64,000 nucleotides of DNA from Octopus sinensis (GCF_006345805.1 NC_043021.1:16492001-16556000), one strand, 5' to 3'. Shown: positions 5,469 to 25,632, counted from the stretch's first letter. The notes: a model not told the origin generated them from the sequence alone. A program made the numbers and translations.

Positions 5469-5505
5469 AAATGAGCTGTGTTCATGAATACAGATTCTCT
5501 CTTGC
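5469..5505 (+). CDS. AGTRAP: AGTRAP-like gene, alternative microexon A (37 nt; xAA-MSCVHEYRFSLA)
   Basis: Pyrimidine-rich CTTTGTCTGTATTTTCAG acceptor; donor GTATCCTTT (U12 consensus) at 5506; phase 1 to phase 2; joins in frame to 25526; YRFxL[A/G] homologous to exon B and to human AGTRAP GRFGVG (recalled). Confidence 0.75.
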
Positions 5506-5936
5506 GTATCCTTTTCCCCCATTTAGTTTTACCTGAGTTTCTTTTTTTTTGTTTGTTTGTTTGTTTGGTTGGTTGTTGTTTTCTTGCTTGTTACTCTTTT
5601 ACTTGTTTCAGTCATTTGACTGCGGCCATGCTGGAGCACCGCCTTTAATCACACATTCCTTTTTTTTGCACCATTTTCTTAACTTTTTCTAGTTTTCAAG
5701 TATGTGGTGTGGAGGTGGTGGTGGTGGTGGTGGTGGCGTCTTTTATCATCTCCTCCTCCTCCTCCTCCTCCCTGACCCCCTCCCGTTCCACTTCATTTCC
5801 CCGCCCTCAAACTGATGTTCACTGCATCCACCTCAATTCCCGTCTCTAATCATCTGCCACGCTCTTTTCACGCCCAGACTCACTCACCCACCTTTTCTGT
5901 TTCTCTATCACTACTCTCACTCTTGTATTCACCCCG

Positions 5937-6092
5937 TGGTGAAGGTGCGTGGCTTATTGGTTAGGGTATTTGGCTCTTGATCATAAGGTTGTGAGATCGA
6001 TTCCTGGCAACAACCTTGCCTGGACTTGTACCTGGGAGGGTAACTTTCTAGGTGCAATCCCACGGTCAGTCATGACCGAAGGGGGTCTCAGC
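5937..6092 (+). mobile_element. Internally deleted tRNA-derived SINE (S5 family)
   Basis: Head GTGAAGG[C/T]GC..TGGCT and tail GGAGGGTAACTTTCTAGGTGCAATCCCA..GACCGAAGGGGGTC both match the full copy at 57799-58143. Confidence 0.65.
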
Positions 6093-6221
6093 ATCACACA
6101 ACTTCATTTTGTTGAGTGTAGTATTGGTTATGAACTGCATATATCTAATTTGAAGGCTTTCAAAAAAATTATTTGATGTATACATATATATATATATATA
6201 TAAAAATATATATATCATCTT

Positions 6222-6485
6222 TGTTTAATGTCCGTTTTCTATGCTAGCATGGGTTGGACGGTTCGACCGGGGTCTGGGAAGCCAGGAGGCTGCACCAGGC
6301 TCCAGTCTGATCTGGCAGTGTTTCTACCGCTAGATGCCCTTCCTAATGCCAACCACTCCGTGAGTGTAGTGGGTGCTTTTTACGTGCCACCAGCACAGGT
6401 GCCTTGGGTGGCTGGCAACGGCCACGATTGGTTGGTGCTTTTTACGTGCCACCGGCACGGAAGCCAGTCAAGGTGGCGCTGGCAT
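6222..6485. mobile_element. SINE-like repeat, family S2
   Basis: TTTAATGTCCGTTTTCTATGCTAGCATGGGTTGGACGG...GTGCTTTTTACGTGCCACC; many copies in the window. Confidence 0.75.
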
Positions 6486-6540
6486 ATAGTTGAAAAAATA
6501 TTAGAGATCTATACAAATCAAATTTTTATATACTCTTCTA

Positions 6541-6946
6541 CTCTCTTTTACTTGTTTCAGTCATTTGACTGCGGCCATGCTGGAGCACCGCCTTTAGTCG
6601 AGCAACTCGACCCCGGGACTTATTCTTTTTGTAAGCCCAGTACTTATTCTATCGGTCACTTTTTGCTGAACCGCTAAGTGACGGGGACGTAAACACACCA
6701 GCATCGGTTGTCAAGCAATGCTAGGGGAACAAACATAGACACACAAACGCACACACATACATACACATATATATACATATATATGACAGGCTTCTTTCAG
6801 TTTCCATCTACCAAATCCACTCACAAGGCATCGGTCGGCCCGGGGCTATAGCAGAAGACACTTGCCCAAGGTGCCACGCAGTGGGACTGAACCCGGAACC
6901 ATGTGGTTGGTTAGCAAGCTACTTACCACACAGCCACTCCTGCGCC
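6541..6946 (-). mobile_element. Full-length tRNA-derived SINE, family S1
   Basis: Minus strand starts GGCGCAGGAGTGGCTGTGTGGTAAG with A/B-box-like motifs (GGTTCAGTCC), has an internal microsatellite and ends AAACAAGTAAAAGAG. Confidence 0.85.
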
Positions 6947-7281
6947 TATATATAAAAGGTGGAGGTGGAAATAGCACAGATGTAAGTCTAAGACATTTCA
7001 ACTTAGGAGGGAATTTAATAAAAATGATTTTTTGAAAATTATATTAAGAAAATATTACCAGTTTTGATGAATCTCATCTTGTCAAATATCAGTAAAAATT
7101 TACTTCAAATTTTTATAAATTTTTACTATTTGATAAAATGGGATTCACCAAAACCCTTAATATTTTCTTTATATAATTTTTTAAAAATCATTTTTATTAA
7201 ATTCCTTCTTAAATTGAAATGTCTCAGACTTACTTCTGTACTATTTCCACCTCCATCTTTTATATATATATATATATATAT

Positions 7282-7490
7282 GTATCCTTTTTCCAAGAAA
7301 TCTAATGCTCATATCTTAGTTTTTCCTTGGAGCTGGCCGGATCAGAGCGATCTCAAGATTAATCAGCCGAAATTGTGAGGATGATCCGGTTCTTGACTGA
7401 AGATTGAAGGTTTCGAATGTCCCGTCCGTGTTTTTTGTATCGTCTTCTAAATGTTTTGCGTTCTTGTCCCAGTTTGTATTTTTTTACATA
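7282..7490 (+). mobile_element. Short (TA)n-inserted element (same family as 28737-29012)
   Basis: Shares CGAAATTGTGAGGATGATCC.GTTCTTGACTGA and TTTTGCGTTCTTGTCCC with the palindromic copy; flanked by TA repeats. Confidence 0.55.
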
Positions 7491-7504
7491 TACATATGTA
7501 TACA

Positions 7505-22775: not shown

Positions 22776-22856
22776 CTGTGGTTCTCAAGGAGATTCAGTA
22801 TGACAAAGAATGTGACAAGGCTGGCCCCTTTGGAATATAGGTACAACTCATTTTTT

Positions 22857-23489
22857 GGATCTTTTCCTTTTGAACGGCAGACAATTTCTAGTTAACTAAA
22901 CACTTTAAAACTTCGTACACTGGTAGAATGTGTCAAAATAAAACATTTTTTTCTCTTGGCTTTCATGAGAAAATTGTAATTTGTTTGTTTAACGTAGTTT
23001 AATTTTTCGAATTTTAACCAATCCTATGCTCTCTTTTGAGCTAAAATCATTTGCTGCGTCTAAAACTGAGACAACATCCTGTAACTAACCCTAAGCCTCC
23101 CCCCTAACCCTAACCCTAAATTTTTTTTTTCTTAATTGTTAAATTAATTTAATTGTTACGCGTGTAAAAAAAACTAAAGCAATGGAATTAAATTAATTTA
23201 ACAATTAAGAAAAAAATTTAGGGTTGGGGGGCGGTTTAGGGTTAGTTACAGGATGTTGTCTCAGTTTTAGACGCAGCAAATGATTTTAGTTGAATGGAGG
23301 TAATCGATTGGTTAAAATTGCCGAAATGCTCGGATTTTCAGACGAAATATCTTACAAACTATAGAATTTTCTCAATAAAACCAAGAGAAAATGATGTTTT
23401 ATAAACACATTCTACCAGTATACGAAGTTTTAAAATGTTTAGTTAACTAGAAATTGTGTTGACATGTGCCGTTCAAAAGGAAAAGATCC
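22857..23489. mobile_element. Foldback MITE, Merlin-like
   Basis: TIR GGATCTTTTCCTTTTGAACGGCA at both ends; 8-bp TSD CATTTTTT (22849-22856 and 23490-23497); near-palindromic body with CCCTAA/TTAGGG motifs. Confidence 0.85.
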
Positions 23490-24316
23490 CATTTTTTTTG
23501 CCAGCTGAGTGGGCTGAAGCAATGAGAAATAAAGTGTCTTGCTCAGGGACACAGTGCACCACTGGGAATTAAGGTCACGGCCTTACAGTCATGAACTGAC
23601 TACCCTAACCACCTAGATATAAACCTTCACAAGAAGTACAGTTAATGAGAAGACTGAAAGCTGACTACAATAAAAATAAGGGAACTGGTGTCCATTGAAA
23701 TTTATCTAAATATACCACAAAAACAGGTATGTTTCCCAGTTTTTTTTTTGTTTTTTTTTTATTTTATATCTCTCACCACCACTCATATTGTAAGAAACAT
23801 TTCCTTTCATTTAATTGACAGGGGATTCTAACTATGAAAATGTTCACAAATATGTATATATTTATATATATATATATATATCCATGACCAATGAATAATC
23901 AAAATGGAGAGGCGAAACCGGTTGAGGTTATTTTGGTTATCATTGTATTTTAATTACTCTTTCTCTTTTTGTTTTGAGAATTACTCTTGGTTGTGTTTTG
24001 GTTTTGTTACTCTCTCCCCTCCTTGTCCCAGCCTCATCTAAGCTTTTCTATTTTTCAGAATTAACACTTTCGTTAACATTTTCTAATGAAGTATGTTATG
24101 TTTTTTTTTAATTAATTTTTTTTAAATAACTGTAAATTTGGAAAGATTTAATTAACAAACTTTATTTTTAAACTGTTTGTTTGGATTTTTGTTAAATCAG
24201 ACAAAATTTGTCTGAGAAATTATTTTTGTTCTTGAAGAAGTCTTCTGAAGTGCAATGGCTGAAATGTTGAGATTTTAGCAACCAGGATGAGGGCATTAAT
24301 CCAATGTATTATGATA

Positions 24317-24800
24317 TTAACCCTGTTGATACCAATCCAACTGTGACCACCACTTAGTTCAATGATACATACTGTCTCTTTCAAAGTAATCTAAATTAAA
24401 ACCTTCCACCAAAATTCCATGTTCATTTATGTTCTAAACACCATCTTAATAAAGACAAAGTTACCTTACTAAATTCTTGATTATTTTCAAAACTTATTGA
24501 AACAAAAACAGTGTCCTTCAACAGAAATATGACAAGAAAAGGGTTAACCCTTTTGCTACTAACTTGCCTGAGGCACATCCTGCTTCTATAATATACAAAC
24601 TTCCTGTTTTAACCCTTTAGCATTTAGATTTTTCTGTCAAATGTAAAACTTATCTATTCACATTGTTTCAAATTAGGCATTATCTCATAGCTTTAAGAAT
24701 TCAATAATGTGACCGTTGCATATCTAAAATGACATTGTAGGGTAGGTGTGAAAGATCAAATCTGGTTAGTTGAACATAAAACAGTAAATATCTGAGCTGG
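24317..24800. mobile_element. Cluster of TTAA-flanked piggyBac-like MITEs
   Basis: TTAA|CCCTGTTG...AAAAGGG|TTAA (24321-24543), immediately followed by CCCTTTTG and another TTAACCCTTTAGCA at about 24610. Confidence 0.6.
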
Positions 24801-24807
24801 ATATACT

Positions 24808-25210
24808 CTCTTTTTACTCTTTTACTTGTTTCAGTCATTTGACTGCGGCCATGCTGGAGCACCTTTAGTCGAGCGAATCGACCCCAGGACTTATTCTTTG
24901 CAAGCCCAGCACTTATTCTTTCGGTCTCTTTTGCCGAACCACTAAGCTACGGGGATGTAAACACACCAGCATTGGTTGTCAGGTGATGTTGGGGGGACAA
25001 ACACAGACACACAAACACACACACACACATATATATTCATATACATATATACGACAGGCTTCTTTCAGTTTCTGTCTACCAAATTCACTCACAAGGCTTT
25101 GGTCGGCCTTAGGCTATAGTAGAAGAAACATGCCCAAGGTGCCACATTGTGGGAATGAACCCAGAACTATGTGGTTGGTAAGCAAACTACTTACCACACA
25201 GCCACTCCTG
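24808..25210 (-). mobile_element. SINE S1
   Basis: Colinear with 6541-6946. Confidence 0.85.
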
Positions 25211-25504
25211 TTTAGTTGATGTTTGAAATATAGCAAACAAAATATTCTGATATAAAAGAAAATTTCGAGTTTCAGTTGAAAGATGAACATTTTTAAAAGG
25301 AACAGTTTTGTATCCTGGAAATTAGAGGTGGATTGTTATCAAGAGTTTTAGGCTAGGTGGATTTGTAATTTAGTCTCCAACCTACTAGACATTGTATTTT
25401 TTAATTTTTGGAGAGTTGTAAAAACAGTTGCTTACCGTCCTCATGTAATATTTCTCTTCCATTGTCTTCAAATTAATGAATGTAAAAACATGAACAAGTT
25501 TCAA

Positions 25505-25525
25505 TTCCTTGACCTCAGCCGTTAG
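25505..25525 (+). promoter_or_regulatory. U12-type branch site (TTCCTTGAC) and 3' splice site
   Basis: TTCCTTGAC at 25505-25513 matches the U12 consensus TTCCTTRAC; branch A at 25512 is 13 nt from the AG at 25524-25525; no polypyrimidine tract in between. Confidence 0.85.
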
Positions 25526-25632
25526 TATGAGCATTGTCAACCTAATTCTAAAGCCAGTCTCCTGTTTCTTACTGTATCGCATCTATCAAGATCGAGGAGG
25601 AATTTATGAGACATTCAGCATACCAGGCCTCA
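25526..25632 (+). CDS. AGTRAP: AGTRAP-like exon (type-1 angiotensin II receptor-associated protein family)
   Basis: Encodes MSIVNLILKPVSCFLLYRIYQDRGGIYETFSIPGL, versus human AGTRAP MAILSLLLKPLSCCFVYHMYRERGG (recalled); GTAAGT donor at 25633, phase 1. Confidence 0.88.

What the first reader, a model, noticed from the sequence alone, without database searches (positions are those of the whole stretch)
5469..25632. Mutually exclusive microexons enforced by a hybrid U12/U2 intron in an AGTRAP-like gene
Seen in sequence: two homologous microexons 11.2 kb apart (A 5469-5505, 37 nt; B 16672-16702, 31 nt). Each has an ordinary pyrimidine-rich CAG acceptor with no TCCTTRAC, and each ends in the U12 donor consensus GTATCCTT. 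The next exon (25526) has a textbook U12 branch site TTCCTTGAC 13 nt upstream of its AG. Either exon joins in frame: ...YRFSLA|MSIVNLILKP or ...YRFALG|MSIVNLILKP. The A-to-B intron (5506-16671) would be U12 at its 5' end and U2 at its 3' end. Established: hybrid introns are poorly spliced, and this spliceosome-incompatibility mechanism underlies the mutually exclusive exons of vertebrate JNK1/2/3 (MAPK8/9/10); few cases are described. Both exons are 3n+1, so including both also frameshifts, a second safeguard. Inference: an independent, apparently undescribed JNK-like switch in a mollusc AGTRAP. I found no second copy of the MSIVNLILKP exon between A and B, which argues against tandem paralogues.
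Basis: partly seen in the sequence, partly recalled or inferred. Interest (0 to 1): 0.93.

Follow-up and report, generated by a model that had tools for sequence, protein, structure and literature searches.

The report
Two either-or exons in octopus AGTRAP
An octopus membrane-protein gene (AGTRAP-like) has two duplicated mini-exons whose splice signals belong to two different splicing machines, so a transcript should be able to keep only one; the rare arrangement is known from human JNK genes and here arose independently in a mollusc.

Summary
The window is Octopus sinensis (100% identical to GCA_006345805.1 CM016883.1) and holds the 3' half of an AGTRAP-like gene (Pfam PF06396).

- **Architecture.** Exon 5A (5469-5505) and exon 5B (16672-16702) each follow a U2-type acceptor and end in GTATCCTT. 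Exon 6 (25526) is preceded by TTCCTTGAC, 13 nt before its AG. Exon 4, outside the window, has a U2-type GC-AG donor.
- **Isoforms.** RefSeq already lists one isoform per exon in O. sinensis and O. bimaculoides. No record has both exons or neither.
- **Age of the intron.** The intron after exon 5 is U12-type at the same position in three octopuses, Argonauta, two bivalves, a gastropod, an annelid and a nemertean. A zebrafish relative and a hemichordate have no intron there.
- **Age of the duplication.** Only Octopus has two copies of exon 5.
- **Comparison.** Two U2 acceptors, two U12 donors and one U12 acceptor is the published MAPK8/9 (JNK) design.

This is a real new example of a known, rare mechanism, in a new gene and phylum. 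Enforcement by spliceosome incompatibility remains an inference, because no RNA data could be examined. For double inclusion the nonsense-mediated decay (NMD) safeguard is doubtful: the stop lies 23 nt before the last junction.

The parts
5440..5468 (+). U2-type 3' splice region of exon 5A: pyrimidine-rich tract ending in CAG. No TCCTTRAC lies within 40 nt.
   Evidence: Nearly identical in O. bimaculoides and O. vulgaris: one substitution in O. vulgaris, at -13 from the acceptor.
5469..5505 (+). Exon 5A, 37 nt (3n+1). Encodes (E)MSCVHEYRFSL(A). It is the derived copy, with 2 extra residues relative to the whole family.
   Evidence: Used in RefSeq isoform X1 of O. sinensis and O. bimaculoides. 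37/37 nt identical in three Octopus species.
5506..5513 (+). U12-type GT-AG donor GTATCCTT of exon 5A.
   Evidence: Conserved in O. bimaculoides and O. vulgaris.
5506..16671 (+). Hybrid interval between the two exons: U12 donor at the 5' end, U2-type branch site, pyrimidine tract and AG at the 3' end. It is 11.2 kb here, 10.3 kb in O. vulgaris and 1.75 kb in O. bimaculoides.
16645..16671 (+). U2-type 3' splice region of exon 5B: CACTAAG (near-consensus U2 branch site), a T-rich tract and CAG. No U12 branch motif.
   Evidence: Identical in O. bimaculoides and O. vulgaris.
16672..16702 (+). Exon 5B, 31 nt (3n+1). Encodes (D)LIGTYRFAL(G). Collinear with the single exon 5 of Argonauta and of decapodiform transcripts.
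   Evidence: Used in RefSeq isoform X2 and in the only annotated O. vulgaris product.
16703..16710 (+). U12-type GT-AG donor GTATCCTT of exon 5B. Positions +1 to +9 (GTATCCTTA) equal the human and mouse MAPK8 minor-intron donor.
25505..25525 (+). U12-type branch site TTCCTTGAC followed by a short spacer and AG, with no pyrimidine tract. It is the shared 3' splice site for both donors.
   Evidence: Orthologous sites in nine other loci carry the same kind of motif 9-13 nt from the AG.
25526..25632 (+). Exon 6, 107 nt, constitutive. Encodes MSIVNLILKPVSCFLLYRIYQDRGGIYETFSIPGL. Its own donor, GTAAGT, is U2-type.
26231..26340 (+). Coding part of the last exon (exon 7), including the TGA stop.

Best explanation
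The window holds exons 5A, 5B, 6 and 7 of the Octopus sinensis AGTRAP-like gene. This gene family has an ancient U12-type (minor-spliceosome) intron after exon 5.

**Origin.** In the Octopus lineage exon 5 was duplicated in tandem together with its U2-type acceptor and its U12-type donor.

**Possible splices.**
- Exon 4 has a U2-type GC-AG donor. It can be joined by the major spliceosome to the acceptor of 5A or of 5B.
- The chosen exon's U12 donor is then joined by the minor spliceosome to the single U12 branch site and 3' site in front of exon 6.
- Joining 5A to 5B would need a U12 donor with a U2 acceptor.
- Joining exon 4 directly to exon 6 would need a U2 donor with a U12 acceptor.
- Neither spliceosome handles such hybrids, so each mRNA keeps exactly one of the two exons.

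**Leaks.** Any leak also shifts the frame, because both exons are 3n+1.

**Protein.** The two products differ in 10-12 residues: the turn between helix 3 and helix 4 and the first turns of helix 4.

**Shown:** the sequence architecture, its conservation, and the existence of both annotated isoforms. **Inferred:** that incompatibility is what enforces exclusivity, and any functional difference between the isoforms.
For: - **Identity of the gene.** The window equals O. sinensis CM016883.1. The gene is PF06396 AGTRAP at 150-152 bits.
- **Exon 5 signals.** Consensus U12 donors lie exactly at the ends of both exons. The only + strand TCCTTRAC of the window lies 13 nt before exon 6.
- **Exon 4.** Its donor is CAG|GCAAGT, a U2-type GC-AG site.
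- **Acceptors of 5A and 5B.** Both have pyrimidine tracts, 5B has a CACTAAG branch site, and neither has a U12 branch motif.
- **Conservation of the intron.** The same intron is U12-type, with GTATCCTT (GTATCCTA in Lineus) and a TCCTTRAC-like motif 9-13 nt from the AG, in:
  - cephalopods: O. bimaculoides, O. vulgaris and Argonauta;
  - other molluscs: Crassostrea virginica, Mizuhopecten and Gigantopelta;
  - an annelid, Owenia;
  - a nemertean, Lineus.

- **Annotated isoforms.** RefSeq gives one isoform per exon in O. sinensis (XP_036369069.1 and XP_029651070.1) and O. bimaculoides (XP_014780949.1 and XP_014780950.1). The protein cluster has only these four members, none with both exons or neither.
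- **Single gene.** Exons 4, 6 and 7 are single copy.
- **Literature on the mechanism.**
  - The same design is documented for MAPK8/9, where the hybrid intron 'cannot be properly spliced' (PMC1874599; PMC8329584).
  - O. sinensis is among the species used in a survey of minor-intron conservation, and molluscs are relatively rich in minor introns (PMC10639083).
Against: - No RNA-seq, long-read or experimental data could be examined, so exclusivity rests on annotated models only.
- RNA support for those RefSeq isoform models is assumed from general knowledge of NCBI's Gnomon gene-prediction pipeline. It was not checked.
- The U12 donor came along automatically with the duplicated exon, so the architecture could be a by-product rather than a selected switch.
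- Octopus species are too close (about 90-97% identity in the flanking introns) for conservation to prove constraint on either exon.
- Exon 5B carries two non-synonymous differences between O. sinensis and O. bimaculoides.
- Exon 5A replaces a Gly that is at least 90% conserved in the family with Ala.
Confidence: 0.8

Rival explanations
1. The two exons are genuine alternatives, but exclusivity is set mainly by other means: competition and regulation of the two acceptors, splicing order, or frameshift plus decay of double or null products. On this reading the U12/U2 mismatch is only an inherited by-product of duplicating an exon that happened to precede a U12 intron.
For: - Both exons are 3n+1, so double inclusion or double skipping shifts the frame.
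- 60% of human mutually exclusive exon (MXE) clusters contain exons whose length is not divisible by three, whereas only 0.79% show U2/U12 incompatibility (PMC5740500).
- The U12 donor is ancestral, not newly evolved.
Against: - For 5A+5B the stop lies only 23 nt before the last exon junction. By the usual 50-55 nt rule this would escape nonsense-mediated decay, so frame alone is a poor safeguard.
- Hybrid U12/U2 introns are reported not to splice properly (PMC1874599).
- No docking/selector-type complementary element was found.
Confidence: 0.12
2. One of the two exons, most likely the derived 5A, is a rarely used or non-functional pseudo-exon carried along in gene models. The gene would then effectively make one protein.
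For: - 5A has a 2-residue insertion seen in no other family member, and Ala in place of a nearly invariant Gly.
- No 5A-like exon was found in Argonauta or in decapodiform transcripts.
- No independent transcript assembly (Logan) of either octopus isoform is in the protein collection.
- Interspecies conservation is uninformative.
Against: - Two separate RefSeq annotations (O. sinensis, O. bimaculoides) each list both isoforms.
- 5A is 37/37 identical, with intact frame, acceptor and U12 donor, in three Octopus species.
- 5A keeps the family motif EYRFSL better than 5B does.
- Isoform A scores 150 bits on PF06396 against 152 for isoform B.
- Isoform A folds into the same four-helix model as isoform B.
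Confidence: 0.07
3. The two exons belong to two tandem gene copies, or the U12-like motifs are chance matches next to ordinary U2 introns.
For: Motif counts in the window are not above chance by themselves.
Against: - Exons 1-4, 6 and 7 are single copy in the 95-kb O. sinensis locus and in the O. bimaculoides locus.
- The motifs sit exactly at exon boundaries and recur at the orthologous boundaries in three phyla.
- As U2 donors, TGC|GTATCC and TGG|GTATCC match the U1 consensus at only 3-4 positions (read directly from the sequence).
Confidence: 0.01

Closest known systems
Vertebrate JNK genes (MAPK8/9/10), mutually exclusive exons 6a/6b (7a/7b in later assemblies)
   Same: [quoted passage not shown]
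- The intron between the two exons is a U12/U2 hybrid (PMC8329584; PMC1874599).
- The exon 5B donor GTATCCTTA equals the MAPK8 donor at +1 to +9.
   Different: - The gene family is unrelated: a small four-helix membrane protein rather than a kinase.
- The phylum is different (Mollusca), so the origin is independent.
- The exons are micro-exons of 31 and 37 nt.
- The upstream donor is GC-AG.
- The hybrid interval is 1.75-11.2 kb.
- Nothing is known here about tissue regulation. In JNK, Nova and the long pyrimidine tract of the hybrid intron set the choice.
TMEM87A/TMEM87B exons 11/11a (Olthof et al. 2019)
   Same: Mutually exclusive exons arranged around a minor intron, with a U2-type acceptor embedded in the U12 intron. 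No reads join the two exons (PMC6717393; PMC8329584).
   Different: - There, the second exon is described as a cryptic exon inside the minor intron.
- Here, both exons are clear homologues of the family exon and both are in reference annotation.
AGTRAP (ATRAP) of vertebrates
   Same: Same Pfam family PF06396 and the same conserved RF-x-x-G|M-x-I-x-x-L-x-x-KP segment.
   Different: - The zebrafish relative Danio aesculapii has no intron at this position: exons 4-6 are one exon. The hemichordate Glandiceps also lacks it.
- AGTRAP does not occur in the held text of the human and mouse minor-intron lists of Olthof 2019.
- The switch therefore cannot exist there.
Exon-4 alternative clusters in the same family (Lineus longissimus, three copies; Ostrea edulis, two copies)
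   Same: Tandem-duplicated alternative exons in AGTRAP-like genes of lophotrochozoans, changing helix 3 and the loop before helix 4.
   Different: A different exon is duplicated. Its downstream donor does not show GTATCCT (Lineus), so the exclusivity mechanism must differ. This was not investigated.

Membership tests
U2/U12 spliceosome-incompatibility mutually exclusive exon pair (JNK type) | Two adjacent alternative exons that are homologous versions of one exon | tested here: met
   - Both encode the family motif YRF-x-L-x at the same place.
- Both are 3n+1 with the same phases.
- 13 of the last 18 nt are identical (counted by hand from the exon sequences printed), and the donor 8-mer is identical.

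U2/U12 spliceosome-incompatibility mutually exclusive exon pair (JNK type) | Upstream constitutive exon has a U2-type donor, and both alternative exons have U2-type 3' splice sites | tested here: met
   - Exon 4 donor is CAG|GCAAGT, a GC-AG U2-type site.
- Both acceptors have pyrimidine tracts and CAG, and 5B has a CACTAAG branch site.
- No TCCTTRAC-like motif lies at U12 distance from either acceptor.
- The judgement is by consensus only. No position-weight-matrix scoring tool was available.
U2/U12 spliceosome-incompatibility mutually exclusive exon pair (JNK type) | Both alternative exons end in a U12-type 5' splice site | tested here: met
   |GTATCCTT at 5506 and at 16703. Conserved in O. 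bimaculoides and O. vulgaris.
U2/U12 spliceosome-incompatibility mutually exclusive exon pair (JNK type) | Downstream constitutive exon has a U12-type branch site and 3' splice site | tested here: met
   TTCCTTGAC at 25505-25513, with the branch A 13 nt from the intron end and no pyrimidine tract. The orthologous site is conserved in three phyla.
U2/U12 spliceosome-incompatibility mutually exclusive exon pair (JNK type) | Transcripts contain exactly one of the two exons | tested here: inconclusive
   RefSeq lists one isoform per exon in two species and none with both or neither. No read-level data could be examined.
U2/U12 spliceosome-incompatibility mutually exclusive exon pair (JNK type) | Splicing of 5A>6 and 5B>6 depends on the minor spliceosome, and the hybrid intron is not spliced | not testable with these tools
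   Needs U12/U6atac knock-down, a minigene, or deep RNA-seq.
U12-type (minor) intron, GT-AG subtype | Donor /RTATCCTT, a branch site TCCTTRAC about 10-15 nt from the 3' splice site, and no pyrimidine tract | tested here: met
   Ten orthologous donors and eight acceptors from cephalopods, bivalves, a gastropod, an annelid and a nemertean all fit.
AGTRAP protein family (Pfam PF06396) | Score above Pfam's gathering threshold over the whole domain | tested here: met
   Isoform A scores 150.2 bits and isoform B 152.2 bits against a cutoff of 25, covering profile positions 1-142 of 156.

The most novel reading that the evidence does not exclude
This would be an independent, protostome origin of the JNK-type spliceosome-incompatibility switch. 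It was created in one step when an exon lying between a U2 intron and an ancient U12 intron was duplicated, so the exon pair was mutually exclusive from birth. The same family also has exon-4 alternative clusters in a nemertean and an oyster. Together these would point to repeated selection for variation at the helix 3/helix 4 junction of AGTRAP-like proteins in lophotrochozoans.
Probability: 0.55. Interest if true: 0.5.

Novelty: new member of a known kind. Interest (0 to 1): 0.4.

Why it matters
Few mutually exclusive exon pairs are attributed to U2/U12 spliceosome incompatibility:
- the JNK genes;
- TMEM87A/B;
- five clusters (0.79%) in a human-wide survey (PMC5740500).

All described cases that I found are vertebrate.

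An invertebrate case with a datable origin gives a natural experiment on how such switches arise. Here the U12 intron is ancient and the exon duplication was seen only in Octopus. The gene is small, which makes it convenient for minigene tests of hybrid-intron incompatibility and of exon definition across 31-37-nt micro-exons flanked by different spliceosomes.

It does not change what is known about the mechanism. The two protein isoforms are already in public annotation.

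Tried and rejected
- **Upstream exons.** tblastn with a remembered human AGTRAP sequence found only exon 6 in the window. Exons 1-4 lie outside it.
- **Isoform B look-up.** An exact look-up of an isoform B built on the O. 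bimaculoides backbone failed, because the window is O. sinensis. The look-up of P0009 also failed, because only the longest product of each gene is indexed.
- **Exon 5A in Argonauta.** None was found, using relaxed U12-donor patterns, a peptide motif and blastn of the flanks. The only hit was the 5B-like exon.
- **Docking/selector RNA pairing.** The (AAT)n-CAATAATCATCTC element lies upstream of both exons, but it has no complementary copy in the 95-kb locus. The idea was dropped.
- **Interspecies conservation as a test of constraint.** Octopus species are too similar, and the introns are about as conserved as the exons.
- **Rfam scan of the window.** No match.
- **AGTRAP among human and mouse minor-intron genes.** Not listed in the held supplementary text of Olthof 2019. 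This agrees with the absence of an intron at that site in Danio.
- **Other lineages with an alternative exon 5.** None among the isoform clusters read. The Lineus and Ostrea isoforms differ in exon 4 instead.
- **Tandem paralogues and chance motifs.** Both rejected.

Full report
**1. The observation**

- Exon 5A is 5469-5505 (37 nt). It is preceded by ...ctgtattttcag and followed by GTATCCTTTT.
- Exon 5B is 16672-16702 (31 nt). It is preceded by ...tttttctatttcag and followed by GTATCCTTAC.
- Exon 6 begins at 25526. TTCCTTGAC lies at 25505-25513, with the branch A 13 nt before the end of the intron. It is the only TCCTTRAC on the + strand of the 64-kb window.
- Either exon joins exon 6 in frame.

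Motif counts alone are not above chance: GTATCCTT occurs 5 times against 2.46 expected, and TTCCTTRAC twice against 1.25 expected. The evidence is that the motifs sit exactly on exon boundaries, and do so again in the orthologues (section 3).

**2. What the locus is**

The window is 100% identical over the whole 36,340-base overlap to Octopus sinensis GCA_006345805.1, CM016883.1 (locus L003, offset +58,947).

The gene encodes a 172/174-residue protein of Pfam family PF06396 (AGTRAP). It scores 150-152 bits against a cutoff of 25.

In window coordinates, or L003 where stated, the exons are:

| Exon | Position |
|---|---|
| 1 | L003 10001 |
| 2 | L003 47788 |
| 3 | about L003 55480-55596 |
| 4 | L003 56609-56702, 2.2 kb upstream of the window start |
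| 5A | 5469-5505 |
| 5B | 16672-16702 |
| 6 | 25526-25632 |
| 7 (coding part) | 26231-26340 |

Exons 4, 6 and 7 are single copy, so tandem paralogues are excluded.

Exon 4 ends CAG|GCAAGT, a U2-type GC-AG donor. This is conserved in O. vulgaris and O. bimaculoides.

**3. The U12 intron is ancient; the duplication is not**

The intron after exon 5 has |GTATCCTT (GTATCCTA in Lineus). It also has a TCCTTRAC-like branch motif 9-13 nt before the AG, without a pyrimidine tract. This holds in the following species:
- O. bimaculoides (both exons)
- O. vulgaris (both exons)
- Argonauta hians
- Crassostrea virginica
- Mizuhopecten yessoensis
- Gigantopelta aegis
- the annelid Owenia fusiformis
- the nemertean Lineus longissimus

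Exon 5 is 3n+1 in all of them.

In Danio aesculapii, and in the hemichordate Glandiceps, the corresponding coding sequence is uninterrupted. AGTRAP is not in the held text of the human and mouse minor-intron lists.

Two copies of exon 5 were found only in the three Octopus species.
- Argonauta has one copy, which is 5B-like (DFFGTFNFAFG). No second U12 donor or exon-5-like peptide lies between its exons 4 and 6.
- Decapodiform transcript assemblies show a single form...SEYRFALG.
- Exon 5B is collinear with the whole family, whereas 5A has two extra residues.
- Inference by parsimony: 5B and the Argonauta exon share the derived 'GT', while 5A keeps the ancestral 'EYRFSL'. The duplication probably predates the Octopus/Argonauta split, with later loss of 5A in Argonauta. 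This is not established.

**4. Are both exons used?**

RefSeq lists one isoform per exon:

| Species | Isoform with 5A | Isoform with 5B |
|---|---|---|
| O. sinensis | XP_036369069.1 (X1) | XP_029651070.1 (X2) |
| O. bimaculoides | XP_014780949.1 (X1) | XP_014780950.1 (X2) |

- The only annotated O. vulgaris product (CAI9740889.1) uses 5B.
- The cluster holds just these four sequences, none with both exons or neither.
- From general knowledge, alternative models from NCBI's Gnomon gene-prediction pipeline require transcript support. I could not check the reads, and no independent transcript assembly of the octopus isoforms is in the collection.
- Exon 5A is 37/37 identical in three species. 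Exon 5B differs at two non-synonymous sites in O. bimaculoides.
- The flanking introns are themselves about 90-97% identical, so conservation proves little.

**5. Mechanism**

The allowed pairings are:
- exon 4 (U2 donor) with the U2 acceptor of 5A or of 5B;
- the U12 donor of the chosen exon with the U12 branch site and 3' site of exon 6.

Joining 5A to 5B (5506-16671) would pair a U12 donor with a U2 branch site (CACTAAG), a T-tract and an AG. Joining exon 4 to exon 6 would pair a U2 donor with a U12 3' end. Both are hybrid introns.

As U2 donors, TGC|GTATCC and TGG|GTATCC match the U1 consensus at only 3-4 positions (read directly from the sequence).

This is the arrangement described for MAPK8/9, 'two U2-type 3'ss and two U12-type 5'ss' (PMC8329584). 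There the hybrid intron 'cannot be properly spliced' (PMC1874599). TMEM87A/B is a second described case (PMC6717393). A human-wide survey found five such clusters, 0.79% of the total (PMC5740500).

O. sinensis is one of the species used in a survey of minor-intron conservation, and molluscs are relatively rich in minor introns (PMC10639083).

Frame provides a back-up of uneven strength:
- Skipping both exons gives a stop 102 nt before the last junction.
- Including both gives a stop only 23 nt before it. Under the usual 50-55-nt rule that transcript would escape nonsense-mediated decay.

No complementary 'docking' element for the shared (AAT)n-CAATAATCATCTC motif was found.

**6. Protein consequence**

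AlphaFold models of both isoforms (mean pLDDT 77.5 and 81.0) give the same four-helix bundle. Exon 5 supplies the helix 3/helix 4 turn and the first turns of helix 4 (hydropathy). Isoform A has two more residues there, and Ala instead of a Gly that is at least 90% conserved. A functional difference is unknown.

**7. Verdict**

It is a new member of a known, rare kind of splicing switch, in a new gene and a new phylum.

No paper linking AGTRAP and U12 was found. None of the eight papers that mention both mutually exclusive exons and octopus looked relevant by title or abstract; they were not opened.

The isoforms themselves are already annotated. RNA-level exclusivity and dependence on the minor spliceosome remain to be shown.

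Noticed in passing
L010 about 11616-11735, 15354-15470 and 18313-18420 (Lineus longissimus); Ostrea edulis proteins P0037/P0138: The AGTRAP-like gene of the nemertean Lineus has three tandem alternative versions of exon 4 (RefSeq isoforms X1-X3). Oyster isoforms X1 and X2 also differ only in exon 4. The family has therefore evolved alternative tandem exons around helix 3/helix 4 at least three times. The exon-4 donor shows no GTATCCT in Lineus, so exclusivity there must work differently.
   Followed up: partly
window 5674-5692 (O. bimaculoides L002 36215-36233): A U12-like branch motif TTTTCTTAAC, followed 9 nt later by AG, lies about 170 nt downstream of the exon 5A U12 donor. It is present in both species. 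It could be a cryptic or decoy U12 3' splice site. The reading frame behind it is not conserved.
   Followed up: partly
window 7282-7289 and 11473-11480: Two more + strand GTATCCTT lie inside the 5A-5B interval, in sequence absent from O. bimaculoides. The one at 11473 follows cag plus 29 nt (3n+2), so it would be out of frame if ever used.
   Followed up: partly
window 5364-5401 and 16602-16645: A shared element, (AAT)n followed by CAATAATCATCTC, lies upstream of both alternative exons: 68 nt before 5A and 27 nt before 5B. It may be a remnant of the duplicated unit or a binding site. No complementary copy exists in the locus.
   Followed up: partly
L003 56703-56708 (outside the window; also L002 33849 and L011 45724): The exon 4 donor is a GC-AG site (CAG|GCAAGT) in the three Octopus species. 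It is an ordinary GT donor in Argonauta and Owenia.
   Followed up: partly
window 8784-16330: About 7.5 kb of the 5A-5B interval has no counterpart in O. bimaculoides, where the interval is 1.75 kb rather than 11.2 kb. A 197-aa ORF on the minus strand (13933-14523) has no Pfam match.
   Followed up: partly
window 44630-45469 (+): An ORF matches glycosyltransferase family 8 (PF01501, E 5.8e-07). It corresponds to the neighbouring gene downstream of AGTRAP-like in O. bimaculoides.
   Followed up: partly
window 19915-21000 and 3776-5133: A 108-bp unit is repeated 10 times (96% matches) in the intron between 5B and exon 6. A 1.3-kb AC/AT-rich microsatellite lies just upstream of exon 5A and produces spurious long ORFs in all frames.
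   Followed up: no
proteins P0002, P0003, P0011, P0028 (decapodiform-like transcript assemblies): These transcripts have a single exon-5 form but several different N-termini, which suggests alternative first exons in the squid or cuttlefish orthologue.
   Followed up: no
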